Assembly (NCBI GenBank): GCA_002269645.1
Contig: NIVC01001461.1
Coordinates: 121,313-185,312 of the forward strand
DNA from: Macrostomum lignano
Lineage: Eukaryota
Length of the DNA stretch: 64,000 bases
Direction of reading: 5' to 3'
Shown: positions 2,543-46,200 of the stretch, piece after piece
How positions within the stretch are numbered: position 1 is the stretch's first letter
Layout: each line of letters starts with the position of its first letter
The notes under the pieces: model-generated
Database searches by the model: none
Seen by the model: only the letters and a program-made list of their open reading frames with translations
Told to the model about the DNA's origin: nothing
Program-made: the position numbers and the translations under genes

Positions 2543-5500
2543 ATGGAAGATCAAAGTGCTTTTGGTGTTGGTTCTGTAGATGGATATGGAAAGCAAGCGC
2601 AGCAGGGTCAGAATTTAGGTGAAGAAAATCCAACAGATGGTAGCAACACAAAAGATCCGTTTTACACAATGCCAGGAGTTTTGCACTTTCTACAAACTGA
2701 GTGGTCTAAGTTTGAGATGGAACGATCTCAATGGGAGGTAGAGCGAGCAGAACTACAGGTAAGTTACTAAAAATTCAATGGCAAATCTAACTAGACTCTA
2801 GAGGACTAGGGCCTATTTTTCTTATGTTGGCTCTGGTTCAAGTGTTTTAAATTAAAACGTTGAGTGCTTAACTATTCACTATCTGCAAGCAAGCCATTTT
2901 TAGTAGTGGGCCTAGTTGTTTTAGAAAATATATTTCAAAGTTACTAAGCATGTAATTAATAATTAATATCTTAGGCCTATGCTAATTATAACTATTTCTT
3001 TAGGAGCATTTTAAAGAACTAAGTATATTATTTATAAAATTAATTTGCTTTATTCTTTTAAACTGTTAAATGATACCTTTATTATAACAACTCTATAATT
3101 AGCAAAAATTAAAGCAGCTTGCTATTGTAATATTGTTTCAATCAACTATATTACATATATTATATAATATATATATTATACATTATATATTATACATATT
3201 TATAGATTTTTCAATTATAATATTTGATTTTTATCTTTCATAGCACATGGCATATCATATCATATAAGATAACTTTGGCCAATTGTTTTTTATCAATGTT
3301 AAACTGACATTAAGATATATATAGCTAAAGAAGTGACTTGTGAGATAGTTGTATATTAGACAACAAGTGAATTAGGATGGCTAACTAAGGCCCAAGGCCC
3401 CAGCAGTAGAGCAACCAGAAATTTTTTGAAAGGGGACAGATTCTAGATTTTAAAGACCAAGGCAAGAAGAGAGGCAAAGGGGCTAGCTTAGTATTTTGGC
3501 AAAAATGCACTTGGTCCCCTAACTCCCCTCTTAATTAGCTGATTTTTATCAAGTCTTCACCTAAGGGCCAAGAAGGGCAAATTTCCCTTCCTTATCCCCT
3601 CTTGGTTGCATTTTTGCTTGCTAGCCTCAAATTTAAACATTATTGTCATAAATTCTATAAATTCTATAAATGAAAGTTTCTATAAATACACAGTATCTTG
3701 CGTAATAAATAGACAATTTACTGAATTTATTGAACGATAATAGGCATCTACTGAACGATTTCTGCCATAGTCAGGAAGGTGGCACAGTGTGTGCTAGAAT
3801 AAATTTTTGGGACAATCTGTGCGCCGTCTATGTGCCCTCTATGCACCATTTGTGCGCTGTCTGTGCACCATGTCTATGCCTTTATTTTACATATTTTATG
3901 TAAATTATGTATTTTACAACAAATTTACAAAATTCTTAGAATTCATGCAGACAATATGCTATGCCAGTTTTATGCTAATAAAGATTCTATTCTGATTCCT
4001 TATGTACCAAAGTTATGCACAGCACCGCATATGTCAAGGACCTTATGCACCACATAGGGACCTCAGTGTGCATCATGATTGTGCGCCGCATGTGCCAGGG
4101 ACCTCAGTGTGCGCCATGATTGTGTGCCAAGTGCGCTAAGGACGCCCTGATTGCAGCGCATGGGCATTTTGGCGGACGGCGTCCGGCGCGGATCTAATAC
4201 AGCGCGGTGCGGCGCGTACGGCGAGCAGCAATTAGTACGGCGCGGCGCGGTACTAATTAGATGCCGAGGCATTTACGCTTGATAAGACAGTCATAGTTAC
4301 TCCTGCCGTTTACCCAAAACTGCGTTAATTTTGCTTTAGGGTTTCTTTCACAGGTAAGTCATTTCACAGCGTGGCGCAGGTTGTGTAGGCGTCTGGCGTA
4401 CTTAAGCCATGCGCTGCAATAGGGAAGGACGCCTTGTATGCACCGGAATTTTCCATGGCAAAGGCTACCTTCCTGACTATGGGCCCCAGGATAGAATTCT
4501 TGCATAAAAGTTGTTACGCATTTGTGCGCGCTGAAAAGGAGCCTACTTGCACACTCTTAAAGAAGTTGTTTGCACATTCCATCGTATGCACTTGTGCAAG
4601 AAGCTGTTTGCCACAGAATCATAGACAGGATTTGACTTTTACATGCATTAACATGGTTATGTGCCGTGTGGCGTATGTGCGCTCAAGTTCTCCTACTTTT
4701 CATAGTCTGGAAGGTGTTTTTACTTAAACTTTTTTTCTCTAAAAATATATTTATAAAGATAATATTATAAATATTAGTTTATTATTTAACATACAAATTC
4801 CAATCAGAAAATTGCATTTTCCCTAGTTTTTACTAAAGCAATTTAGAAAATTCTTTTTTGTGCATACATGCTACAATGATACATATTTAAGTGTAATTTC
4901 ATTGTTCTTTCTTACCTCATAAGCCTACAAGAAGCATTTTATTTATATGCCAGGTTCAAATTTTGTAGTACCATTTTTACCCAAAACTTTTAGTCTAAAT
5001 ATAGGCATATTACATACACTAATATTATACAAGTTAATATTTAAATGAAAAAAACATCTTAAAGATTTTTTGCAACAAGGAATTAGCAGTATATTTACTT
5101 TTAGAAAAAATATTTTTAGTATATTGGATGTTTGCTGGCAAACTTTGAACTTTAAATTAGTGGTTTTCGAAAAACTTAAAAATCCTTAGAAATTGTTTAT
5201 CTTTTTGAATAAAATAAAAAGTAAAGCAGAATACTTTCTGTTTTGTAAGTAGTGAAAACAATAGCCTTATTTTAGGTCTACAAGTCTTAAAATTAATTGT
5301 TTATCAATAAAAAAGTGAAACAAAAATTGTGAATTGGTTGACTCAAACATTTAAAATTCTTTTTTGTGGTTTTTTACTTATCTATTCAATAATGTAAAGT
5401 ATGAAAACAATATTTTTTTATCTAAAATTATTGTTAAAGACTTATCTGTCTTTCAAAAAGCTTTTTTCAATACATTACCTTCTATCAAATGTCTGCAGAT

Positions 5501-8500
5501 TTGTTTTACTGTTTTATCCCACATTTTTGGATTTCGCCATATATATATATAGCATTTTTAAATTCTACTAGCTATGCGAAATTTAAAAATCTAATATAGC
5601 TATCCATGTTATAGAAAGTGTAATATATGCCAGAAAATTCCAGCATACAAATGCTTTAGCTAGTTTACATATGACATACAAGGAAGAAATACAACTTTCT
5701 GGCATAATCATTGGCTTATAATTCCTAACTATATATATTTATATGTTCCAACTTGCGGCATAGCATGCAAAAGCATTGAACTATATGTCATATTTGCATA
5801 AATTATACTAAATATTAATCCTTTGCTATAGTATAGTTAATTTTGTAATTATGACTATAGATTAGGTTTTAAAATAATATACTGAATTTTTTCAGTTACT
5901 AATGAAATATATAACTAAATCAATAATATATAACTATTTTGTTTTACTATTTTTTCTATTTTTGAAATGGTGAGGTTTTATTTTTCTGTAGCAATTATTT
6001 GCTGCATCTATAGCTTATTGCATAGGTTATATGCTTAATAATAATACAATTTTAATGGCGTACAATTTACTAGAACAAATAATTGGTATAAATTACTACT
6101 TTACTAGGTAGCCAAATACTTTCTGACATACAGCACAATCTACAATATGAATAGCTAGTTCTAGTTGCAATTTTTTGTTTTATTTTAAATTTAAATTTTC
6201 TTTTGTTTTGTCCCTTGTTAGCCTTTTGCTTTTATATTTTTAGAGATGGACTAGTTTTGCAACTTATTTCTGGTTACTAGCCAAGTGGATAAAAAAACAA
6301 AATCGCTTAGAGATTAACATGTCTAACTCTAAGCCAGTCATTTTACCTTACTTTCTATCTTGTTCTAAGAATACTTATCAACTATGTCCTATATATTGGA
6401 AAGTGCTCTATTGTAATTATGGCTATGACCAGGCCCTTTATGGGGAAATTTAGAATGGCAATTTTTTAGCAAAGTTTGGTTATGGATTTTGGCTATCAAG
6501 ATTGCCTAGTGGCAGCCACAGTTATAGATTATGGAGATTTAGAGCACCTTACATAATTTTCCATATTATAAATCCTATAGGCATATGTATTCTTTGCTAA
6601 ATCCCAAAATATCCTTGCCAGGGCATTCCATGCTTATTTGAAAATTAGGTCTAGATAGGAAAATTCTGATTAAATAAATTGTAAAACAAATATGTCAGCA
6701 AGTATTTTTAGTATAAATATTCTGATAGCATTCTGTGTCAATTAAATTGTCTTTGTAGTTTATATGTAAGGTGCTATTGGCATTATTTTTTAAAAAACCA
6801 GCTTACAAGCTATAAACTCTTACATGTTATTTGGGCGAGGTATTTCCATCATTTCTAGTTTAAATCTTTAAGCTTTAACTTTTTCTGTAATTATTCTTTG
6901 CATTTATTTAAATGCATATTCTTGCTATGCTACTAACAGTAAGTGAGTAGTGCAAAATGCGAACAAACCAAAGATACCACCAAACCACACCCATCAGGCT
7001 CGCATCGCATTCCTGCAAGGCGAACGGAAAGGCCAGGAAAACCTGAAGCACGATCTGGTGCGCCGCATCAAGATGCTGGAATTCGCCCTGCGCCAGGAGC
7101 GCGCCAAATTTCACCGGCTCAAATTCGGCTCGGAGCCGCCGGGAGGGGCCGCCATCGCCGCCGCCACGGCTGGCGACGCCACAGATGGAGACAGCGGAGC
7201 GTCTCCGGCGGTGTCGCAGCTGCTGGATCCCGAGGAGCTGCTGCGCGAGACCAGCACTCAGACGGCTGCGACCAAGGCTAAGGCCAAGGACGGCAGGCAG
7301 CTGATTAGGCAATACCTGCAGGTGAGTGCTCTCTGTTCTAGGATAATTCTCACTGAGCTAGACCTAGTGAGGCATTAATTCCCTGTGAGTATTTGACTAA
7401 TCTGACTGTCCTTAGTAATTCCCTGTGAGCATTTAGCTAATCTGACTGTCCTAGTAATTCCCTGTGAGCATTCGGCTAATCTGACTGTCCTTAGTAATTC
7501 CCTGTGAGCATTTGGCTAATCTGACTGTCCTTAGTAATTCCCTGTGAGCATTTGGCTAATCTGACTGTCCTTAGTAATTCCCTGTGAGAATTTGGCTAAT
7601 CTGACTGTCCTTAGTAATTCCCTGTGAGCATTTAGCTAATCTGACTGTCCTAGTAATTCCCTGTGAGCATTCGGCTAATCTGACTGTCCTTAGTAATTCC
7701 CTGTGAGCATTCGGCTAATCTGACTGTCCTTAGTAATTCCCTGTGAGCATTTAGCTAATCTGACTGTCCTAGTAATTCCCTGTGAGCATTCGGCTAATCT
7801 GACTGTCCTTAGTAATTCGCTGTGAGTATTTGGCTAATCTGACTGTCCTTAGTAATTCGCTGTGAGTATTTGGCTAATCTGACTGTCCTTAGTAATTCGC
7901 TGTGAGTATTTGGCTAGTCTGTAATAGTAATTCGCTGTGAGTATTTGGCTAGTCTGTAATAGTAATTCGCTGTGAGTATTTGGCTAGTCTGTAATAGTAA
8001 TTCGCTGTGAGTATTTGGCTAGTCTGTAATAGTAATTCGCTGTGAGTATTTGGCTAGTCTGTAATAGTAATTCGCTGTGAGTATTTGGCTAGTCTGTAAT
8101 AGTAATTCCCTGTGAGCATTTGGCTAATCTGACTGTCCTTAGTAATTCCTTGTGAGCATTTGGTTAATCTGCCCCAGTAATTCCCTGTGAACCGTCCCGA
8201 TTTCCCGTGAACATTAGCAAGTCTAAGCTGGCAAATCACACACAGGAGATCGGCTACGTGGACACCATCCTGGATGCCAGACAGGCTCGCCTGCAGCAGC
8301 TCATTGGCGCCAGCGGTACGACAGCGTCGGCTGCGGCACCCGTTGCTGCCGCTGCCACCGTCAGCTCAGCCAGTAACGATTCTAAGCCGCCGACGTCTCA
8401 GCAGCAGCAGCCGCCGCCCCCGCCGTCGCACCAGCAGCACCAGCAGCAGCAGCAGCCGCAGCAGATGCGCCAGATAACAAGCAGGTCGCAGCAGCAGCCG

Positions 8501-11500
8501 CAACAGCGCGGCCGAAGCATTCAAGAGCAGCTGTCCAGCCTCATTCCCGGCATCAATATTGCCGGCGACGACGAGGATGACGACGAAGATGACGACGCTG
8601 ATGACGCCGACGTTGATGTTGGCGTCGGCGGCAGCGGACGGCTCGTCAGAGGCGGAGGAAAAACTGCGCTGTCTGAGGAGGATCAGGTGAGCAAAGCTGG
8701 CTTAATCCGCGATGCCAGTTTTTAAAAGTACATCATGGAGATGCTATAAGATAAAAGTACCAGCGAGATTCAGGTGTTATAGAGGATTTGGAATTAAGTT
8801 GTTGTAGCCTAGTGGTTAAGAGCGTCAAACTCACGACTGAAAGGTCGGGGGTTCGATTCTCGACCCACTCTGAACAACTTTTGTCCATGAGCGCTCTGGT
8901 TTCGGGACGATGTCGCCGAAGGCGTTGCGTCGAGGTGCGCACAGCCCTCGTGCGAATATTATTAGTGTTGTATAGATACTAATAATAGGGATTTAAGATA
9001 AAAGTACATTAAGGCGTTACTACGATAGACTGTAGACAGGTGTAAGATTGCTTCAATATTAAGGTGAGGTGGTGTAGGTAAAACAGAAGTACGCATTGCT
9101 TTATTTGTGATTTAAAAAAAATTAAATGTTAACTTGAGGGGTTGGCTAAAAGTTCATTAATTTAAAAGTACATCTGGGCGTCAGTAAGGTGACAAATCCA
9201 TGGTGACAAATCCGCAGGCCATGGCCACCTTCGACTTCGTGCTGGACCAGCAGGACTCCGACATTCAGCAGCCGGCTGAGGACTCTAAAGACTCCGCAGC
9301 CGCTGCTGTTGCCGGCGGCGAAGACGGCGCCGGAGGCGTCGACGAGGACGCCGAGTGGAACCTGGATGAGCGAACCCGGTCCAAGATGGAGGCCTTCAAG
9401 AAAGAGCGCATCAGGGGCTCGAAGAAATCCACCGGAAGCGCTGGCGGCGGCAGCGGCGGCGGAAGAGTCGGCATGCTGGACGCTTTTCTTGACGGCTTCG
9501 ACCGCGGCGAGGAGGGCGGCACCGTTGACGACTTCGACGGGGTGACGCCCAGCAGCGCGGCCGCTGCTGCCGTGGCCGCCTCCGAGGAGGAGGGCTTCCG
9601 GTCCGCTATGGGGCTCAGCCTGGGAGACCTGCAGGTTTGCGCGCGACTGTTGAAAGATTTCAGGAGATCTCTGTAAATGGATTTAGGACTGGGATCTCTG
9701 TGAATAGCTTTGGAATCTCGGTGAATAGCTTTGAGATCTCTGTGAATAGCCTCGAGATCTCTGTGAATAGCCCTGGCATCTCTGTGAATAGCTTTGGGAA
9801 CTCTGTGAATAGCTTTGGGAACTCTGTGAATAGCTTTGAGATCTCTGTGAATAGCCCCGGGATCTCTGTGAATAGCTTAGAGATCTCTGTGAATAGCTTT
9901 GAGATCTCTGTGAATAGCTTTGGGATCTCTGAATAGCTTTGAGATCTCTGTGAATAGCTTTGGGATCTCTGTGAATAGCTTTGGGATCTCGGTGAATAGC
10001 TTTGCGATCTCTGTGAATAGCCTTGGGATCTCTGTGAATAGCCTCGGGATCTCTTTGAATAGCCTCGGGATCTCTGTGAATAGCTTTGGGATCTTGGTGA
10101 ATAGCTTTGAGATCTCTGTGAATAGCCTCGGGATCTTTGTGAATAGCTTTGGGATCTCGGTGAATAGCTTTGAGATCTCTGTGAATAGCCCCAAGATCTC
10201 TGTAAATAGCCTTGGGATCTCTGTGAATAGCTTTGAGATCTCTGTGAATAGCTTTGGGATCTCTGTGAATAGCTTTGGGAACTCTGTGAATAGCTCTGAG
10301 ATCTCTGTGAATAGCTTTGGGATCTCTGTGAATAGCCCCGGGATCTCTGTAAATAGCCTTGGGATCTCTTTGAATAGCCTCGGGATTTCTGTGAATAGCC
10401 TCGGGATCTCTGTGAATAGCCTCGGGATCTCTGTGAATAGCTTTGCGATCTCTGTGAATAGCTTTGGGATCTCTGTGAATAGCTTTGGGAACTCTGTGAA
10501 TAGCTCTGAGATCTCTTTGAATAGCCTCGGGATCTCTGTGAATAGCTTTGAAGTATCTTTCTCTCTAACGCTTCCCACGCCCCGTGCCCCCAAATCCCAG
10601 AACATCGACGTGACCAACGAGCGCGACTACGACGACGATGTCGGCATTTCGGCCGGCGGATCCGCCTCGGCCCGCCGCACCTGGGCCTCCAAGTTCAACC
10701 TGCGCTCCCACCTGGACAGCGTTCGGAGCCTGGCCTTTCATCCCACCGATTCGGCCCTGCTGACGGCTTCCGAGGATGGCACAATGAAGCTGTGGAATCT
10801 GAGCGGCAGAGCCGTGCATCAGGTGCGGTGAATGGCTGAGGACCAGGCGGGGAAGGGATCAGGAGGGAGAGGGGATCAGGAGGGAGAGGGGATCAGGAGG
10901 GAGAGGGGATCAGGAGGGGAGAGGGGATCAGGAGGGAGAGGGGATCAAGAGGGAGAGTGGATCAGGAGGGAGAGGGGATCAGGAGGGAGAGGGGATCAGG
11001 AGGGAGAGGGGATCAGGAGGGGAGAGGGGATCAGGAGGAGAGGGGATCAAGAGGGAGAGTGGATCAGGAGGGAGAGGGGATCAGGAGGGGGAGAGGGAGT
11101 CAATTGGAGAGGAGATCAGGGGGAGGGAAGGGGTATCAGGAGAGAAGAGATGGAGAAGACATGCGGATGTAGGAAGAATAAGGAGGAAGCATCGCAATGT
11201 TGATAACCTAAAATCCGCTTGACCGCCCGGCACTCCAGGAGGCGGGCTCGCCCACATCGGCAGGGTCGGACAGCCAGCGCTCGGCAGGCGGCACGGCCGG
11301 TCCCCAGGTGGAGCTGGAGCCGGTGCACACATACCGCGGCCACGCTGGCCCTGTGCTGACCGTCTGCGTCTCTCCCGACGGCGGCCTCGCCTGCACTGGC
11401 GGCCTGGACGGCTGCGTGCGGGTCTGGCGGCTGCCGCCCAGCCTGTCCGGCCTGGACCAGTACGACGCCTTCGATGCCAGCCTGGTCGGCGAAGCTCTTG

Positions 11501-13402
11501 AAGGCCACCAGGATGCCGTGTGGAGTCTGGCCGCTATGGGGCCGGTGAGTTGCATTGGGGAAGCCTTTTTAAATAGTTTTGAAAATCCAAGGTGAGGAGT
11601 GAGCCTAGCGGTCAAAGCGACGGGCTCACGACTGAAAGGTCGGGGGTTCGATTCTCGACCTACCCGGAAAAAATTTTGTGTCCTTGAGCAAGACGCTTAA
11701 CTCTGCATTGCTTCAGTTCACCCAGCTGTAAAATGGGTGCCAGCATTAGCTGGGGTAATTGAGGGTGTGTGACGACCCCCCCCCCTCAGTCCTTGGACTG
11801 AACAGCCGTACGCAGCCTTCAGATGCGCCGCGCAATAGCTGCGGCTGAGCTGTCGGACCCCTAAGCACAGTGTTTACATGCAGCAGACAATCATCGTGTT
11901 CGCGGGGCTGCTCACAGAACTGAGAAAAGTGACGCTTCAGACTGGTTTCCATTGCAATTTTATTTTAATAATTTACCCAGCCAATACCTGCTTTTTCAGG
12001 ACACCGTGTTCTCCATCGGCGCTGATTCCACTCTGCGCGCCTGGCGCACTCGTCACCATGGCAACCAGCAGGGCGATGACGAATCTGGTTCGTCGAGTCC
12101 CCTGCTGCGCACCAGCGAGCTGCCCGGCCGGCCCACCAGCCTGGCTATTGTGCCCGCCGATCCCGGCAAGCTGCTCGTCTCCATGGCAACTGTTGCCGAC
12201 TCGGCCGGCTCCTGTCTGCTGCTGGTTGACGCCGAGACCGGCCAGACAGTGCTGCGAATGCCTACGTCATCTGCTGGCGAGGGCGAAGGCGCAGCCGCCT
12301 CTGCGACTCGGGTGGTGGCGCACCCGACTCAGGTGAGTTCGGAATCCAAGCTTTCCCTATTCGTGGGCGTTTGGTTGCTATGGAGATTCTAATTGGTTGG
12401 GGATTCTGATCCCATCCTGACTCTGATTGATTGGGGATTCTGATCCCATCCTGACTCTGATTGATTGGGGATTCTGATCCCATCCTGACTCTGATTGGGG
12501 ATTCTGATCTCATCCTGACTCTGATTGATTGGGGATTCTGATCCCATCCTGACTCTGATTGGGGATTCTGATCTCATCCTGACTCTGATTGATTGGGGAT
12601 TCTGATCCCATCCTGACTCTGATTGATTGGGGATTCTGATCCCATCCTGACTCTGATTGATTGGGGATTCTGATCCCATCCTGACTCTGATTGATTGGGG
12701 ATTCTGATCCCATCCTGACTTTGATTGGGGATTCTGATCCCATCCTGACTTTGATTGGGGATTCTGATCTCATCCTGACTCTGATTGATTGGGGATTCTG
12801 ATCCCATCCTGACTCTGATTGATTGGGGATTCTGATCCCATCCTGACTCTGATTGATTGGGGATTCTGATCCCATCCTGACTCTGATTGATTGGGGATTC
12901 TGATCCCATCCTGACTCTGATTGATTGGGGATTCTGATCCCATCCTGACTCTGATTGATTGGGGATTCTGATCCCATCCTGACTCTGATTGATTGGGGAT
13001 TCTGATCCCATCCTGACTCTGATTGATTGGGGATTCTGATCCCATCCTAAATCCCCCCACCAACAACTCCGTTGAATCTCACAGGCCACGGCCATGGCCG
13101 GCTACTCGGACCGCTGCATCCGTTGCTATGACTACGCATCGGGCGAGCTGACGCACAGCATGGTGGCCCACCTGGACTCGGTCACCAGCCTGGCCGTGGA
13201 CCCCAACGGTCTCTACTTGGTGTCTGGCAGCCACGACGCCTCTCTGCGCGTCTGGAGTCTCGACGATCCGCGCAGCTGTGTGCAGGAGATCGCCGCGCAC
13301 CGGCGCAAGTTCGACGAGGCCGTACACGACGTGGCCCTGCACCCGGCCAAGAGTCTCCTGGCCAGCGCCGGGGCCGACGCGCTGGCCAAAGTCTTTGTTT
13401 GA
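2543..13402 (+). CDS. STRN: Striatin family protein (PP2A B''' subunit, STRIPAK scaffold), 8 coding exons, ~858 aa
   Basis: join(2543..2758,6998..7321,8246..8686,9218..9634,10601..10822,11239..11544,12000..12332,13085..13402), all GT-AG. N-terminal YTMPGVLHFLQTEWSKFEMERSQWEVERAELQARIAFLQGERKGQENLKHDLVRRIKMLEFALRQER, calmodulin-binding RQLIRQYLQEIGY, WD40 repeats (LRSHLDSVRSLAFHP; SGSHDASLRVW), C-terminus ASAGADALAKVFV. Paralog (STRN/3/4) not resolvable. Confidence 0.95.
4145..4424. mobile_element. 280-bp MITE-like element with TIRs and target-site duplication, nested in the 718-bp element
   Basis: TIRs CCCTGATTGCAGCGCATGG / CCATGCGCTGCAATAGGG (14-bp perfect core). Flanking direct repeat AAGGACG (4138-4144, 4425-4431), extendable to AAGGACGCC. 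Confidence 0.7.
4253..4315 (-). pseudogene. 28S rRNA-derived fragment (helix 69-71 region)
   Basis: Minus strand GGGTAAACGGCAGGAGTAACTATGACTGTCTTATCAAGCGTAAATGCCTCGGCATCTAATTAG vs conserved eukaryotic 28S GGGTAAACGGCGGGAGTAACTATGACTCTCTTAAGGTAGCCAAATGCCTCGTCATCTAATTAG (recalled consensus): 52/63 identical, ungapped. Confidence 0.85.
7376..8193 (+). repeat. Minisatellite, 39-40-bp unit (34-bp variant distally), striatin intron 2
   Basis: Unit TAATTCCCTGTGAGCATTTGGCTAATCTGACTGTCCTTAG, ~20 copies. Confidence 0.95.
8801..8875 (+). mobile_element. tRNA-derived SINE head (truncated copy)
   Basis: A box TAGCCTAGTGG, B box GGTTCGATTC. Shares CTCACGACTGAAAGGTCGGGGGTTCGATTCTCGACC with the copy at 11598. 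Confidence 0.75.
9660..10553 (+). repeat. 21-bp minisatellite, striatin intron 4
   Basis: Unit GGGATCTCTGTGAATAGCTTT with variants, ~40 copies. Confidence 0.95.
10852..11140 (+). repeat. Purine-rich ~18-bp minisatellite, striatin intron 5
   Basis: Unit GGAGGGAGAGGGGATCAG. Confidence 0.9.
11598..11856 (+). mobile_element. tRNA-derived SINE with CORE-like middle domain and LINE-derived 3' tail (3'-truncated)
   Basis: Pol III A/B boxes; CCTTGAGCAAGACGCTTAACTC...CAGCTGTAAAATGGG resembles the CORE/MIR-type motif; tail CAGCCGTACGCAGCCTTCAGATGCG. Homologous to 40531-40833. Confidence 0.85.
12391..13050 (+). repeat. 30-34-bp minisatellite, striatin intron 7
   Basis: Unit GATTGGGGATTCTGATCCCATCCTGACTCT(GATT). 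Confidence 0.95.
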
Positions 13403-13540: not shown

Positions 13541-14246
13541 TCTGTAGCAGATTTGTGTTCAGTTTCTGGCAGATTGGTGTGCAGTTACTGGCAGATTGGT
13601 GTGCAGTTGCTGGCAGATTGGTGTGCAGTTGCTGGCAGATTGATGTGCAGTTGCTGGCAGATTGGTGTGCAGTTGCTGGCAGATTGATGTGCAGTTGCTG
13701 GCAGATTGGTGTGCAGTTGCTAGCAGATTGATGTGCAGTTGCTGGCAGATTTGTGTGCAGTTGCTGGCAGATTGGTGTGCAGTTGCTGGCAGATTTGTGT
13801 GCAGTTGCTGGCAGATTTGTGTGCAGTTGCTGGCAGATTTGTGTGCAGTTTCTGGCAGATTGGTGTGCAGTTGCTGGCAGATTGGTGTGCAGTTGCTGGC
13901 AGATTTGTGTGCAGTTGCTAGCAGATTGATGTGCAGTTGCTGACAGATTGGTGTGCAGTTGCTGGCAGATTGGTGTGCAGTTGCTGGCAGATTTGTGTGC
14001 AGTTGCTGGCAGATTTGTGTGCAGTTTCTGGCAGATTTGTGTGCAGTTGCTGGCAGATTTGTGTGCAGTTGTTGGCAGATTTGTGTGCAGTTGTTGGCAG
14101 ATTGGTGTGCAGTTGCTGGCAGATTGGTGTGCAGTTGCTGGCAGATTGGTGTGCAGTTGCTGGCAGATTTGTGTGCAGTTGCTGGCAGATTTGTGTGCAG
14201 TTGCTGGCAGATTGGTGTACAGTTGCTGGCAGATTGGTGTGCAGTA
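13541..14246 (+). repeat. 21-bp minisatellite just downstream of the striatin stop codon
   Basis: Unit GCAGTTGCTGGCAGATT(T/G)GTGT, ~33 copies. Confidence 0.95.
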
Positions 14247-29899: not shown

Positions 29900-30977
29900 T
29901 AATAATAATAATAGTTACGCCCCACGCCAGCCATAGAAGTGGCCAAAAGGGGGGAGCGTCAAATCGCGCGTTTCAGAACTACGTCTCTAATGTGCTTCAC
30001 ACAGGCCGCCTGGCTGGGTGCTCGCGCATCTTCAAAAAGGCGGTCGACGTAGCGGGTAGCCTGCGCGGTCCCGCGGTGTCCACAGCAGGACGTCCTGCAG
30101 CGGCTCTGGGCAGTAAGCTTCGGCCCGGATGACATGTCCGGCCAGCCGCAGGCGCCGCTGACTCAGCAGGGCAGAAGGCCGCGTCAGGCCTGTGCGCTTG
30201 TACAGGGACTCGGTTGTCTCGCTGCCAGGGCCGCGGCGGGCGCCGAAAGCGGCGCGGACTAGGGCCGCATGTGCCGCGTCGAGCTGCGCCTCAAGCGCCC
30301 CGGTCAGCGTCCAGGTCTCAGCATTGTACAGCAGGGCGGTCTCAACAACCGCCTGGAACAGCTGGGACCTGGCGCCGTCGGACAGGGCCTCGGAGAGCAG
30401 CACCGCCCGCACAGATCGGAAGGCAGCCCATGCCTTGCCGCGCCGTCTCGCTAGGTCGTCGCCGACGTCCGGCACCAGTCCGCCGAGGTAGACGAACTGA
30501 AGGCACTTCGGGAGCGCCGTCCCGGGGCCGTCGCCGTCTCGAAGTCGAATCTCGGCGGGTAGATCATGCGGCACCGTCAGCACCTCGGTCTTCCTCGCGT
30601 TGATGACGAGACCGACCCTCGCCGCCGCCGCAGTCAAGCCGTCCAGCAGCCGTTGGGCGCCTTCGGCCGTCGAAGACAGCAGGACGAGGTCGTCCGCGTA
30701 GCCAAGGACAGACAGTTTCTTCTCCGGGTGCCGTCTACTGGTGCGCCTTTGCAGCAGAAAGCCGTCCTCTGATGTCGGCAGGCCAATCCTGAGCACCCAG
30801 TCCATCACCAGCACGAAGAGAAAGGGCGCCAGAGTGTCACCCTGTAGCACTCCGGACGTCGTGCTAAACAGGTCCGACGGTCCGTCTGGCGTCGCTACCG
30901 CGGCGGTGGTGTCCTGATACAGCGCCATGATGGCGGAGATAAGCTGCTGCGGCACGTTGTAGGCACGGAGCACAGCA
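29900..30977 (-). mobile_element. 5'-truncated RTE-type non-LTR retrotransposon (RT C-terminal half, 3' UTR, (ATT)n tail)
   Basis: ORF 30032..30973 with TTSGVLQGDTLAPFLF, LGYADDLVL, GLVINARKTEV and FVYLGG RT motifs. The minus-strand end reads GGGGCGTAACTATTATTATTATT. Confidence 0.92.
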
Positions 30978-40200: not shown

Positions 40201-43200
40201 TTACTGTAGGAAATAAGTAGAAACGCACCTGCCAGTCAGATTGGCCTGGTCGAACATGATGTTCAGGCGGGACATCAGAACCGGATAGGCAGCCGCGGTG
40301 GGCCACTTGGCCATGGACACAACATTGGTGTAGGACTGCCTGACGCACGGATGCGCGCAGCTGTTCAGAGCTTCAGTGGTTGCGGCCGCTTCCGGACTGT
40401 TAAAGTAGCGATCGTGACAGAGGCTCCTATCGATCAGGCGGTCGACCGCCTAGGAGCGAATTGGGGTGACATTCGATCGATCGCGATGTCTGCCACCGGG
40501 CATGATGGCACCCTCCTTGAGCAGGGTACGATAATAATTCACTACACCTGCCCCAATTGGGTCAGATGTGCAACCGACAGCTCAGCCGCAGCTATTGCGC
40601 GGCGCATCTGAAGGCTGCGTACGGCTGTTCAGTCCAAGGACTGGGAGAGGGAAGTCGCCACACACGCCCTCAATTACCCCAGCTAATGCTGGCACCCATT
40701 TTACAGCTGGGTGAACTGATGCAATGCAGAGTTAAGTGTCTTGCTCAAGGAGACGAATTTTTCCAGTGGGATTGGGAATCGAACCCCCGACCTTCAAGTC
40801 GAGAGTCCGACGCTCTAACCCCTAGGCTACAGCCCCCTCCCAAAAAAGTGCTCTCAAAAATTCTGCCGCATCTTGTTGGCGCGGGATAAAGACTTCTCCA
40901 TTGATCTAGATTATTTGTCTGCTGTCCTGCTAGATATTGATCCAATTTATTGGAAACTTTTTCTAATTGTTTCTGAATGAACTCTCCTATATGCTCCTCT
41001 TTCTCGATCGTCCAGGGTATAGTTTTTCAACATTTAGTACTCAGACTTATGAACTGGAAGATGCTTTAACTAATTTTTATTCGTATGAGCTACCTTTCGC
41101 GCTGTCGCATTCCAGCTCACGTAGTGCGTCGTAGCCAGGTATTTGAGCCATTCGGCTGACAGGTAGTGGCACTGGTCCCGCAGCTGGTACTGCTCAAACA
41201 CCGGATAAGCGTACGAGATGCAGCCGCACTGCGAGTAGAGAAAAATCTGATAGGAGCGCATCAGGCAGACCTCCTGGTCGTAGGCGAACTCCGTCAGCTG
41301 GCCGTTGGTCCTGTCCAGCACGCGCACCGAGCCCGCCGCCTGGTCCGTCTGGCACGGCTTGGCCGGGGTCGACAGGCTGCGGGTCTCCAGCATGCGCACG
41401 CTGAACTGGTAGGCCTTGGCCGAGGCCATGGTGACTCCCCGGAACTCCGGCACCGGGTAGGTCGTGTGCGGATGGATGATGGTCTTGATGCCCTCAACTC
41501 GGTCCAGCCGCTCGCCATCCGACCGGCCATCGGGCAGCAGCGTCAGGTTGCTCGCTACGGTTTCTGCATCGGCGGAGGAGCTGCTGTGCTCATTCTGCGT
41601 GAACAGCACCAGACGCATTCCGTAGGAGAAGAGGTCGATCTGTTTGGGGCAATCGAAATGTGATCGGAATTTTAACTGGCACCAACGGGGGGCTGAGTTC
41701 GCTAGTCCAATTACTAAATCAACAATCGCCTCATGATGCCTTTGTTTTGAACGTCCTAAATATCGCTTAGGCTGACAATGAATAAGAAGCACTATATACA
41801 AGTACATAGAGTCTTGAAGCGACCCAACACTGCATTGGTTCGGATTTCAAACTCAAAGTGGAACCGATTAAGCTTTTTTAAACAAAAAACCGTTAAAAAG
41901 CTTGACTGTCTTGAAAGCTACGAAACTTTAAAAGTTATTATTGGAGAGCGGCAACACTTAAAAATTATGTTAGGCTTCCTAAACAGACTTCGGAAAGAAG
42001 TTGGAAGGATATATAGATTTGCCTTCGCACAGTCCTGGGTGAGGTTTTGCCATAGACAAAACACGCTTGATTTGGACTTGGGAAGTCCGTAAGGTGAGGC
42101 AATGGTTACTTATGGATACATAATGATCAATTGTCACGAGTGGCGAAGCCCATTTCGCCGACTCCCCTGAGCAGGCACACAAGCGCGCAGATACGTACGC
42201 AGTCATACGTACAAGCACACTCACAGAAGTGTACAGGGCCTTGACTTTGTTTGTCGTTAGGCATGTACACTTCGCTGTGCCTTGGGGGTTGGCTCACAAA
42301 GGTATTAATTGCACGTGCAGAGAGCCAAGCCGAGATTCCAATTTGGCCTCAAATTTATTTGACTGCACTCGGAATCGAGCCTGGGCCGGTGGCACATCAG
42401 AGCGCCGGGCGGGACCACTGGGCTACGTCCCCCATTGTGTATTCATACTGAACTGCTGGCGAACAACAAAGCTGAAAGCTACCGAAAACAAACTCGCAAC
42501 GTGTTGTACAGTTTCAGATCCAATGAGTCTCCCCATCCCCATATCCACGGGAAAATTCGCACCATTTTTTCGCTGGATTCGCTTCTGTCGCTTCTCTCAA
42601 TTCTTTCGCTGTGAAACGTGTAGCAGCCGCGGTACTGGCTGCTGCTGTGCTGGGTGAACATGCTGGCGTTGCACGGCACTCCATGAATCACGCAGTCTAC
42701 CAGCATGTCCTCTAGCGGCAGGTAGAAATCCTTCTCGTTCACGCTGCAGTACCTGCGCATTTTTTTAGGAGGTTTCGTTGTGCCGAGAAATCTGTTGTAC
42801 ATATAAAGTCCATTATATCCAATAAAAGCCATGGAACCTCCACAAATTAGGGCTTATTGCAGCAAACAAACATTTTTGTTGAGAAAAGTAGCAGAAATAC
42901 CAAATTTTGTTCCCTGATTTCTCCTACTCATACCTATTATTTAGCCAATTTCCTTTGAATTCACTATAAATCATTTTCGTGCAGGCAAGCAGAAGTTCTC
43001 TTTGAAGCCTTTGAATAGAGAACGGTGCTTTTGAAAATGTTCCATAAATCGAGAACAAATTGCTCTGTAAATCAGAGAAAGAAAACTGAATTTGAAACAA
43101 TTTTTGATAGAGAAAGTGGCAGAGAGGAGAGGCGGGAGAGGCACGAATGAGAGGATAGAGAGGCACAAAGGGTGAGAGGCCTAGAGGAGAAGCAGATAAG

Positions 43201-45714: not shown

Positions 45715-46200
45715 AAGCTGATTCTGCCTCTCCGGTGTCGAGAATGCGGAGCACTTCATCTGTGAATGCCCGCCTTTACTCAGGACAGGCTCACCTACCT
45801 CGGTCCAAACCCGGACCCTTCCGACGTTTTCAGGCCCGAGAATCTCTGCCAGCTCGTCCGCTACCTAAGGGCTACCGAGTGAGCGAACATCCACCTCCTG
45901 GACTCTCCGGAGGGGGACCGCGCTGCGGACACCGGCACCACCGGATCTCCCTGCACGATACCGCAGCACCAGCTGCCCGTGGTCGCCAGGGGTTAGCGGA
46001 ATGTCGGCAACGCCTCTTTGCTGCATCCGGATGCACGGAGCCCCCTGCAGCTGAGTCAAGTACGTCAAGACACACGTGTGGACTTGGACTTGACAGCCGT
46101 ACGCAGCCTTCAGATGCGTCGCGCAATAGCTGCGGCTGAGCTGTCGGTTGCACATCTGGCCCAGTTGGGGCAGGTGTAATCAATTATAATAATTATTATT
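45715..46200 (+). mobile_element. 3' end of a non-LTR retrotransposon (I/R1/LOA-group-like C-terminal CCHC finger, 3' UTR and tail)
   Basis: From 45722: FCLSGVENAEHFICECP, then a frameshift, then DRLTYLGPNPDPSDVFRPENLCQLVRYLRATE* (stop 45880-45882). Ends GGGGCAGGTGTAATCAATTATAATAATTATTATT. Confidence 0.7.

What the first reader, a model, noticed from the sequence alone, without database searches (positions are those of the whole stretch)
4145..4424. MITE-like element carrying a 28S rRNA H69-H71 copy recoded exactly at the R2/homing-endonuclease cut site
Seen: a 280-bp unit with TIRs (14-bp perfect core) and a 7-9-bp flanking direct repeat AAGGACG(CC). It contains a 63-nt ungapped match (52/63) to one of the most conserved 28S segments. 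Eight of the 11 differences form one block (AGGTAGCC to TCAAGCGT) immediately after CTCTCTTA. A 9-bp hairpin (AATTAGTAC/GTACTAATT, 4230-4258) adjoins it. Established: CTCTCTTAAGGTAGC is the I-PpoI site and the R2 retrotransposon target, Pokey-type elements insert in this neighbourhood, and group I introns cluster here. Inference: either a cut-and-repaired, now resistant target captured by a transposon, an element using rDNA mimicry as decoy or targeting sequence, or a source of RNA antisense to 28S (the striatin pre-mRNA strand is the antisense). I know of no described family like this, but I cannot search.
Basis: partly seen in the sequence, partly recalled or inferred. Interest (0 to 1): 0.85.

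Follow-up and report, generated by a model that had tools for sequence, protein, structure and literature searches.

The report
Flatworm mini-transposon carrying dead 28S piece
A 280-bp transposon remnant in an intron of the flatworm Macrostomum lignano's striatin gene carries a broken, non-functional copy of a highly conserved stretch of 28S ribosomal RNA; this is real but most likely passive cargo, and only one copy could be examined.

Summary
Window 4145-4424 has 19/18-nt terminal inverted repeats with a 14-nt perfect core. It is flanked by a perfect 7-bp duplication, AAGGACG. None of 300 shuffles reproduced that combination. Its interior (4243-4361, minus strand) is a 28S rRNA pseudo-fragment covering H69-H71, with E=1.5e-14 against a profile of 52 real 28S genes. 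An 8-nt block is replaced at the R2/I-PpoI site, and the fragment ends in a 14-nt fold-back.

The window is Macrostomum lignano contig NIVC01001461.1. The element sits in intron 1 of striatin, with the 28S-like strand antisense to the gene. It is nested inside an older inverted-repeat element.

The best reading is a MITE-like non-autonomous DNA transposon whose interior was patched together from rDNA-derived filler. The rRNA helices are broken and the Rfam score is 22.6 bits against a cut-off of 50, so I see no sign of function.

Whether it belongs to a family could not be tested. There is one copy in 169 kb of held M. lignano DNA, and no eukaryotic genome search was available.

One unexpected result: the homeologous striatin intron holds a second, older, AT-decayed relic of the same 28S region. 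It has no inverted repeats, and its changes also cluster around the R2 site. That keeps the cut-and-repair idea alive at low probability. The decoy and antisense ideas have no support.

The parts
2543..2761 (+). Striatin exon 1 (context: start of the host intron 1)
   Evidence: tblastn of P0001 (M. lignano PAA67711.1), aa 1-73, 98.6% identity. The gene call is L001 10001-20860, which equals window 2543-13402.
3765..3780 (.). Left arm of an outer 16-bp perfect inverted repeat, CCATAGTCAGGAAGGT. The element is nested inside this older unit.
   Evidence: A third copy with one mismatch lies at 4701-4715 (I3).
4138..4144 (.). Target-site duplication, left copy (AAGGACG)
   Evidence: D6; significance.
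4145..4163 (+). Left terminal inverted repeat, CCCTGATTGCAGCGCATGG
   Evidence: (I2).
4164..4229 (.). GC-rich filler. It includes a third, partial copy (4184-4198, CGGCGCGGATCTAAT) of the 15-mer that ends the 28S-like piece.
   Evidence: D8: 4184-4198 vs 4243-4257, 87%. No match to 28S profiles.
4230..4243 (.). Fold-back arm: an inverted copy of the last 14 nt of the 28S-like piece (AATTAGTACGGCGC)
   Evidence: I8, 13/14 complementary to 4245-4258.
4245..4315 (-). Well-preserved 28S core (H69-H71), 58/71 identical to the eukaryotic consensus
   Evidence: nhmmer E=1.5e-14, profile positions 584-654. Column comparison.
4275..4282 (-). The 8-nt replaced block (minus strand TCAAGCGT in place of AGGTAGCC). 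It covers the R2 nick and part of the I-PpoI site.
   Evidence: Target sequences.
4316..4361 (-). Decayed 5' extension of the 28S-like piece, about 60-65% identical with small insertions
   Evidence: Infernal alignment to LSU model positions 2200-2314. Single-sequence nhmmer alignments reach 4354-4365. A separate local alignment of this part alone is not significant (P=0.40).
4362..4406 (.). Right sub-terminal unique sequence
   Evidence: No similarity found elsewhere.
4407..4424 (-). Right terminal inverted repeat (reverse complement CCCTATTGCAGCGCATGG)
4425..4431 (.). Target-site duplication, right copy (AAGGACG)
4467..4482 (.). Right arm of the outer 16-bp inverted repeat
6995..7348 (+). 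Striatin exon 2 (context: end of the host intron 1)

Best explanation
Window 4145-4424 is one copy of a short, non-coding, cut-and-paste (terminal-inverted-repeat) transposon. It inserted with a 7-bp target duplication into an older inverted-repeat element in intron 1 of the Macrostomum lignano striatin gene.

Shown:
- The ends, the duplication and the nesting.
- About 119 nt of the interior is a degenerate copy of 28S rRNA H68/69-H71.
- That copy stops abruptly at ...GTACCGCGC, where an inverted copy of its own last 14 nt begins. A third partial copy of the same 15 nt lies 59 nt further on.

Inferred:
- The interior is filler, stitched together during double-strand-gap repair by template switching and snap-back synthesis. 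The template was rDNA or an rDNA pseudogene.
- The unit was then moved by a transposase supplied in trans, which recognises the 18-19-nt ends. The superfamily is unknown. A 7-bp duplication fits P-like, hAT-like or MULE-like enzymes.
- The rRNA piece is passive cargo that is decaying.
- The 8-nt block at the R2/I-PpoI site is one complex multi-nucleotide mutation in a pseudogene, possibly a template switch. TCAAGCG+TAAA resembles CAAGCG(CGGG)TAAA, which lies just 5' of the core in real 28S.
- The older, AT-decayed 28S relic in the homeologous intron and this copy probably descend from one 28S-derived progenitor.
For: Ends and duplication. None of 300 shuffles gave an inverted repeat plus duplication.

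No coding capacity: ORFs are at most 69 aa, and a six-frame peptide query against 5.8 billion proteins found nothing.

The 28S identity is real.

The 28S piece is not functional. It scores 22.6 bits against a gathering score of 50, and Infernal flags non-canonical pairs in H69 and H71.

Fold-back and local duplications of the fragment's tail: (I8, D8).

Nesting in a 16-bp inverted-repeat unit.

The stretch around the element (window 3114-5538) has no counterpart in the homeolog L002, apart from two short pieces. This is consistent with lineage-specific insertions.

Against: Only one copy with these ends exists in 169 kb of M. lignano DNA. Multi-copy status, the defining trait of a MITE family, is therefore unproven.

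No clean empty site was recovered. The 'restored local repeat unit' argument is weak (P=0.026, with the control scoring nearly as high).

No transposase partner was identified.

Simple insertion does not explain why the only other rDNA-like DNA in 169 kb lies in the same intron of the homeolog.

Neutral decay does not predict that both copies have their changes, mostly transversions, concentrated in the same 16 nt around the R2 nick.
Confidence: 0.55

Rival explanations
1. Endonuclease scar, or survivor bias. Ectopic copies of the 28S target are recognised by a 28S-specific element's endonuclease (R2, NeSL-type, or a homing endonuclease). They are either filled by an insertion or mutated by error-prone repair. 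The short copies still visible are the ones whose cleavage site has been destroyed.
For: In the window copy, 9 of the 16 positions around AAGG^TAGCC differ, against 2 of 48 in the flanks (Fisher P=1.8e-5). In the independent L002 relic the figures are 10/16 against 8/48 (P=9e-4). The two middle blocks are unlike each other (3/16), which suggests separate events. The changes in the middle are mostly transversions, while the L002 flanks show GC to AT transitions. Flatworms are known to carry R2 and NeSL elements that target 28S (PMC5035012).
Against: There are only two copies, and the block boundaries were chosen after seeing the data. Both changes preserve length exactly, whereas end-joining scars usually change it. 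No R2 3' end is present at either site. The presence of R2 or any 28S-targeting element in M. lignano could not be tested. The one RT fragment in the window (30032-30973) is not next to any 28S-like DNA.
Confidence: 0.15
2. Not a transposon. A double-strand break in the intron was repaired by copying rDNA-derived filler with repeated snap-back synthesis. This produced the internal fold-back and, by the same process, the inverted termini. The 7-bp repeat would come from fill-in of a staggered break.
For: The interior shows fold-back and local duplication of one 15-mer in three places. Only a single copy was seen. The surrounding region is full of small tandem and inverted repeats.
Against: An 18/19-nt inverted repeat exactly at both ends, abutted at symmetric positions by a perfect 7-bp direct repeat, is the classic transposase signature and never arose in 300 shuffles. 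The terminal repeat sequence is unrelated to the duplicated 15-mer.
Confidence: 0.12
3. The block is the remnant of an extremely 5'-truncated insertion of a 28S-specific retroelement in the rDNA unit that served as the source of the fragment. The element would have captured an already-interrupted 28S copy.
For: The block sits on the R2 nick. 5'-truncated R2 copies and target-site alterations at R2 junctions are well documented (PMC4370867 abstract; PMC5035012).
Against: R2 3' junctions are normally precise (R2 tail followed by TAGCC), and TAGCC is missing here. This reading requires three events that happen to sum to zero net length. It does not explain the L002 copy.
Confidence: 0.06
4. Functional mimic. 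The module acts either as a decoy that titrates R2 protein through the retained upstream and downstream binding regions, or as a source of RNA antisense to 28S from the striatin pre-mRNA.
For: The two flanks retained at high identity correspond roughly to the 60-bp substrate used for R2Bm binding and cleavage. The window copy is antisense to 28S on the transcribed strand. Two of the three changes in H71 are compensatory (U-A to G-C).
Against: The homeolog copy lies in the opposite orientation to the gene and is decaying by AT-biased transitions. The longest perfect complementarity to 28S is 15 nt. Helices H69 and H71 carry unpaired changes. No expression, small-RNA or conservation data are available.
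Confidence: 0.04

Closest known systems
MITEs / non-autonomous TIR DNA transposons with filler or captured host DNA
   Same: Short (280 bp) and non-coding. It has terminal inverted repeats, a target-site duplication and an intronic location. The interior is unrelated to any transposase and is built from foreign pieces.
   Different: Multi-copy status is not shown, and the superfamily and autonomous partner are unknown. The cargo is a 28S rRNA coding fragment. That is not among the rDNA-derived transposon pieces tabulated in the 2024 review (PMC10946416).
Pokey / mPok (piggyBac, Daphnia)
   Same: A DNA transposon and its MITEs associated with rDNA. They carry rDNA-derived internal repeats, and their target lies in the same 28S neighbourhood.
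   Different: Pokey makes TTAA duplications, carries IGS repeats rather than 28S coding sequence, and sits inside 28S genes. This element has a 7-bp AAGGACG duplication and sits in a protein-gene intron.
R2 families with 28S-like 3' UTR (R2Gs, R2Bs-A/B and others; Kojima et al. 2016, PMC5035012)
   Same: A mobile element that carries 110-130 bp of diverged 28S sequence abutting the canonical R2 site.
   Different: Those are non-LTR retrotransposons inserted in rDNA, and their 28S-like part covers only the upstream side. Here the 28S-like piece spans both sides of the site and lies inside a TIR-bounded unit with no RT.
SINE28 (mammals)
   Same: A transposable element built partly from 28S rDNA.
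   Different: SINE28 is a retroposon derived from a different part of 28S, with no inverted repeats.
Dada DNA transposons
   Same: They make 6-7-bp target duplications and carry short sequences identical to their RNA-gene target.
   Different: Dada elements have no terminal inverted repeats and are found inserted in snRNA/tRNA genes. This element has clear inverted repeats and non-genic flanks.
Dispersed rDNA pseudogene fragments
   Same: A decayed, non-functional rRNA piece outside the rDNA array. The L002 relic fits this description fully.
   Different: The window copy is packaged within inverted repeats and a target duplication. No other rDNA-like fragments occur in 169 kb, so they are not a common background here.

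Membership tests
MITE (non-autonomous TIR transposon) | Terminal inverted repeats at both ends | tested here: met
   18 matches plus one indel, with a 14-nt perfect core.
MITE (non-autonomous TIR transposon) | Target-site duplication directly abutting the ends | tested here: met
   AAGGACG at 4138-4144 and 4425-4431. None of 300 shuffles gave an inverted repeat plus duplication.
MITE (non-autonomous TIR transposon) | Small size and no coding capacity | tested here: met
   280 bp. ORFs are at most 69 aa. No protein relatives.
MITE (non-autonomous TIR transposon) | Many similar copies in the genome with different flanks | tested here: inconclusive
   One copy in 169 kb of M. lignano DNA. For comparison, an abundant SINE-like repeat gave at least 8 hits in the same sample. 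No whole-genome search was possible.
MITE (non-autonomous TIR transposon) | Empty site in an allele, homeolog or relative | tested here: inconclusive
   In homeolog L002 the whole stretch 3114-5538 is unalignable. A flank ORF look-up found no other assembly of the locus.
piggyBac / Pokey | TTAA target duplication | tested here: not met
   The duplication is AAGGACG.
hAT | 8-bp target duplication and YARNG termini | tested here: not met
   No register gives an 8-bp identical repeat. The termini start CCCTG/CCCTA.
Dada | No terminal inverted repeats; inserted in a small-RNA gene | tested here: not met
   Clear inverted repeats are present. The flanks are a local 41-nt tandem repeat, not an RNA gene.
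R2 or its internally deleted derivatives | Flanked by 28S on both sides at AAGG^TAGCC, with an R2 3' UTR and no inverted repeats | tested here: not met
   The 28S-like DNA is internal. The flanks are non-rDNA.
Functional 28S rRNA gene segment | Reaches the Rfam gathering score; helices H69 and H71 intact | tested here: not met
   22.6 bits against 50. Non-canonical pairs are flagged in both helices. There was no hit at the gathering threshold.

The most novel reading that the evidence does not exclude
Macrostomum lignano carries a mobile family of cleavage-site-mutated copies of the R2/I-PpoI target. These would be 28S H69-H71 modules that keep the protein-binding flanks but have a destroyed cut site. 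They would be either the surviving record of repeated attack by a 28S-specific endonuclease on ectopic targets, or decoys for it. The two copies in homeologous striatin introns would be members of different ages.
Probability: 0.07. Interest if true: 0.8.

Novelty: new member of a known kind. Interest (0 to 1): 0.4.

Why it matters
If it is passive cargo, this is one more example of how MITE interiors are assembled from filler DNA. It would add a 28S coding fragment to the short list of rDNA pieces found inside transposons, which is useful mainly for repeat annotation of the M. lignano genome.

It would matter more if a genome-wide survey showed many copies with the cut site selectively destroyed. 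That would be a natural record of off-target activity of a 28S-specific endonuclease. It would also show which target positions tolerate change, a topic of current interest because R2 proteins are being developed for site-specific gene insertion.

Tried and rejected
Searches for further copies, all empty:
- Exact-pattern scans for the inverted-repeat pair and for the variant core in viral, metagenome and bacterial/archaeal genome collections.
- A six-frame peptide query of the element against 5.8 billion proteins, meant to catch ORFs called on other copies.
- A look-up of the right-flank ORF, to find another assembly of the locus or an empty allele. It was not on record.

An RT-based search intended to sample more M. 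lignano DNA returned mostly short metagenome contigs and was not useful.

Homeolog comparison gave no empty site. L002 is unalignable over the whole region, and L003 lacks intron 1.

Ideas rejected:
- A snoRNA or other known RNA. There were no Rfam hits apart from the weak LSU match, and the two copies have opposite orientations relative to the gene.
- tRNA-derived SINE. No tRNA was found.
- Dada, Pokey and hAT membership (see the membership tests).
- Host 28S carrying the variant. This was judged implausible because the block is invariant in every reference retrieved and the two M. lignano copies differ from each other. The host 28S itself could not be fetched.
- The block as an inversion or complement of the original 8-mer. 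It does not match.
- Origin from an R2 3' UTR. The upstream 28S-like part next to the site is not less conserved than the downstream part (31/33 against 27/30).

The 'restored repeat unit' at the joined flanks is only weakly significant.
Full report
**What is in the sequence.** Reading 3900-4700 shows AAGGACG|CCCTGATTGCAGCGCATGG ... CCATGCGCTGCAATAGGG|AAGGACG.
- The ends are inverted repeats of 19 and 18 nt: 18 matches and one 1-nt indel, with a 14-nt perfect core at 4150-4163 / 4407-4420.
- They are abutted by a perfect 7-bp direct repeat at 4138-4144 and 4425-4431.
- In the real window there are three perfect inverted repeats of at least 14 bp at 100-800 bp spacing, and only this one has a flanking 7-mer duplication.
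- In 300 shuffles that preserve local composition, the mean was 0.24 such inverted repeats, and none had a duplication.

**The rRNA-like interior.**
- Infernal aligns 4245-4360 (minus strand) to LSU_rRNA_eukarya positions 2200-2314. The score is 22.6 bits, E=0.0028 for a 601-nt search, well below the gathering score of 50. It flags non-canonical pairs in H69 and H71. Nothing reaches gathering in the window.
- To get real references, I retrieved eukaryotic 28S genes that contaminate bacterial assemblies and built a 1.3-kb profile from 52 distinct sequences.
- That profile matches 4245-4315 at E=1.5e-14.
- Twelve whole rDNA contigs used singly give E about 1e-8, with alignments running over 4243-4365.
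- In ungapped register the core is 58/71 identical to the consensus.
- Eight of the 13 differences are one run, AGGTAGCC to TCAAGCGT (+ strand 4275-4282). No run of 8 occurred in 200,000 shuffles of the mismatch positions.
- The block covers -3 to +5 around the R2 bottom-strand nick, AAGG^TAGCC. This is the nick position given by the cleaved-product oligos in PMC13000458. The block also lies inside the I-PpoI/I-Vdi141I site (PMC2602781).
- The gapped alignments from Infernal and nhmmer keep AG(C). 'Eight substitutions' is therefore one of two possible descriptions.

**How the fragment ends.**
- The 28S similarity stops at ...AATTAGTACCGCGC. Immediately after one base, the reverse complement of those 14 nt follows (4230-4243 against 4245-4258, 13/14, I8).
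- A third, direct partial copy of the same 15-mer lies at 4184-4198 (D8), within a GC-rich stretch that matches nothing.
- This is the look of filler made by snap-back and template-switching synthesis, not of a cleanly excised gene piece.
- The block plus its right neighbour (TCAAGCG-TAAA) resembles CAAGCG(CGGG)TAAA, the 28S sequence just 5' of the core. A template switch could have written the block. This is a lead, not a result.

**Where it is.**
- A striatin pseudo-protein assembled from the window's exons hits Macrostomum lignano PAA67711.1.
- The contig that encodes it, NIVC01001461.1 of GCA_002269645.1, is 100% identical to the window.
- Exon 1 is 2543-2761 and exon 2 is 6995-7348.
- The element is nested inside another unit bounded by a 16-bp perfect inverted repeat (3765-3780 / 4467-4482), with a further copy of that motif at 4701-4715.
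- It inserted next to a 41-nt tandem duplication (4056-4137).

**Is it a family?** This could not be decided.
- No tool here searches eukaryotic genomes by DNA.
- I collected 169 kb of non-redundant M. lignano DNA: the window, homeolog L002, partial homeolog L003, and paralog loci L004 and L005.
- The element's ends and GC-rich half occur once.
- As a yardstick, an abundant SINE-like repeat of about 255 bp gives at least 8 hits in the same sample.
- Exact-pattern scans of viral, metagenome and prokaryote collections were empty, as was a six-frame protein search.
- The homeolog gives no empty site. Window 3114-5538 and L002 10836-11985 do not align, except for two short pieces.

**The unexpected second copy.** One of those two short pieces is a second 28S-like fragment.
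- It lies at L002 11234-11295 on the + strand, opposite to the window copy.
- It scores E=1.8e-4 with the 71-nt consensus and E=7e-4 with the profile.
- It is AT-rich. Its differences from 28S in the flanks are almost all GC to AT transitions, and it has no detectable inverted repeats.
- It probably extends further into 28S on both sides than the window copy. The upstream alignment has P=0.044. The downstream alignment reaches about +115 nt, P=0.018, and both are collinear with the core. It therefore cannot derive from the window element.
- No other rDNA-like DNA exists in the 169 kb. Two fragments of the same 28S sub-region in the same intron of two homeologs are very unlikely to be independent.
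- The window copy is nonetheless nested in lineage-specific insertions.
- The two copies share three derived states: G12A at a CpG, G39C and G65A.
- I infer a common 28S-derived progenitor, perhaps with local re-insertion, but cannot show it.

**The site-specific clustering.**
- In the window copy, the 16 nt CTCTCTTAAGGTAGCC carry 9 differences against 2 in the 48 flanking positions (Fisher P=1.8e-5).
- In L002 the figures are 10 against 8 (P=9e-4).
- The two middle blocks resemble each other in only 3/16 positions, and both keep the length.
- The changes in the middle are mostly transversions.
- Neutral decay does not predict this. Repeated cutting by a 28S-specific endonuclease, or survival only of copies with a destroyed site, would.
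- Flatworms do carry R2 and NeSL elements aimed at 28S (PMC5035012).
- Against this: n=2, the block was defined after looking, end-joining scars rarely conserve length, neither site holds an R2 tail, and I could not test whether M. lignano has R2.

**Function.**
- Nothing supports a decoy or antisense role.
- The helices are disrupted. One H71 pair does change compensatorily.
- The longest perfect complementarity to 28S is 15 nt, and the homeolog copy has the opposite orientation and is decaying.
- Folding of either strand is only modestly better than shuffles (z = -2.5 and -2.9), as expected from the inverted repeats and the fold-back alone.

**Comparison with what is known.**
- The 2024 review of rDNA-transposon interplay lists Pokey/mPok (IGS repeats), SINE28, 5S-derived SINEs and Cassandra-type LTR elements as transposons with rDNA-derived parts. 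It lists no MITE with a 28S coding fragment.
- Kojima et al. 2016 describe R2 families carrying 110-130 bp of 28S-like sequence next to the R2 site in their 3' UTR. That is the closest precedent for a mobile copy of this neighbourhood, but in a retrotransposon and only on the upstream side.
- Dada elements make 6-7-bp duplications and carry target-like motifs. They lack terminal inverted repeats and sit in small-RNA genes.
- The element fails the tests for Pokey (TTAA), hAT (8 bp, YARNG), Dada and R2 derivatives. It meets the structural tests for a MITE, except copy number and an empty site, which remain open.

**Verdict.** The most likely reading is an ordinary MITE-like insertion with a 28S pseudo-fragment as filler (confidence about 0.55). 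The 'recoded cut site' is real as a description. It remains open only as a low-probability endonuclease-scar hypothesis, which one genome-wide BLAST would settle. Interest is moderate.

Noticed in passing
L002 11210-11410 (core 11234-11295, + strand): The homeologous striatin intron 1 holds an AT-decayed 28S H69-H71 relic with no inverted repeats. It lies in the opposite orientation to the window copy and reaches further into 28S on both sides. It contains a perfect 8-bp hairpin, TGACAAAA-ATG-TTTTGTCA, created by its substitutions.
   Followed up: partly
window 3765-3780 / 4467-4482, and 4701-4715: A 16-bp perfect inverted repeat, CCATAGTCAGGAAGGT, brackets a 718-bp unit that contains the element. 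A third copy of the motif, with one mismatch, forms a second inverted pair with 4467-4481. This is probably another foldback- or MITE-like element. No clear target duplication was seen.
   Followed up: partly
window 40574-40828; also 11602-11856, 46083-46187, 8803-8869; L002 19441-19694, L003 4029-4284, L004 and L005: An abundant repeat of about 255 bp, 85-93% identical between copies, with a tRNA-like head (Rfam tRNA 28.6 bits against a cut-off of 29 at 40767-40836, minus strand). It is likely a tRNA-derived SINE of M. lignano. One copy lies in a striatin intron shared by all three homeologs.
   Followed up: partly
window 7376-8171, 9690-10550, 10840-11142, 12388-13048, 13547-14245: The striatin introns and the downstream spacer are packed with long minisatellites. 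Periods are 40, 21, 17, 34 and 22 nt, with 17-41 copies at 87-94% identity. They also generate many spurious long ORFs across the window.
   Followed up: no
window 30032-30973 (minus strand): A 313-aa reverse-transcriptase fragment (Pfam RVT_1). Its only PDB sequence matches are Bombyx R2 protein chains (8gh6, 8ibw; E about 1e-10), but it is not next to any 28S-like DNA. Its closest relatives (74-85% identity) sit on short ENA, JGI and Logan contigs.
   Followed up: partly
window 3287-3328 vs L002 10975-11016: A 42-nt piece of intron 1 is conserved between homeologs (86%) but inverted. A neighbouring AT-rich piece (3160-3230 vs L002 11037-11106) keeps its orientation. This suggests small rearrangements or an old inverted-repeat structure in this intron.
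   Followed up: no
Eukaryotic rDNA contamination of prokaryote genome records appears widespread.
   Followed up: no
window 4056-4137: A tandem duplication of a 41-nt unit (80% identical) lies immediately left of the insertion site. The joined flanks weakly continue the local AAGGAC..CTT.TATGCACC motif.
   Followed up: partly
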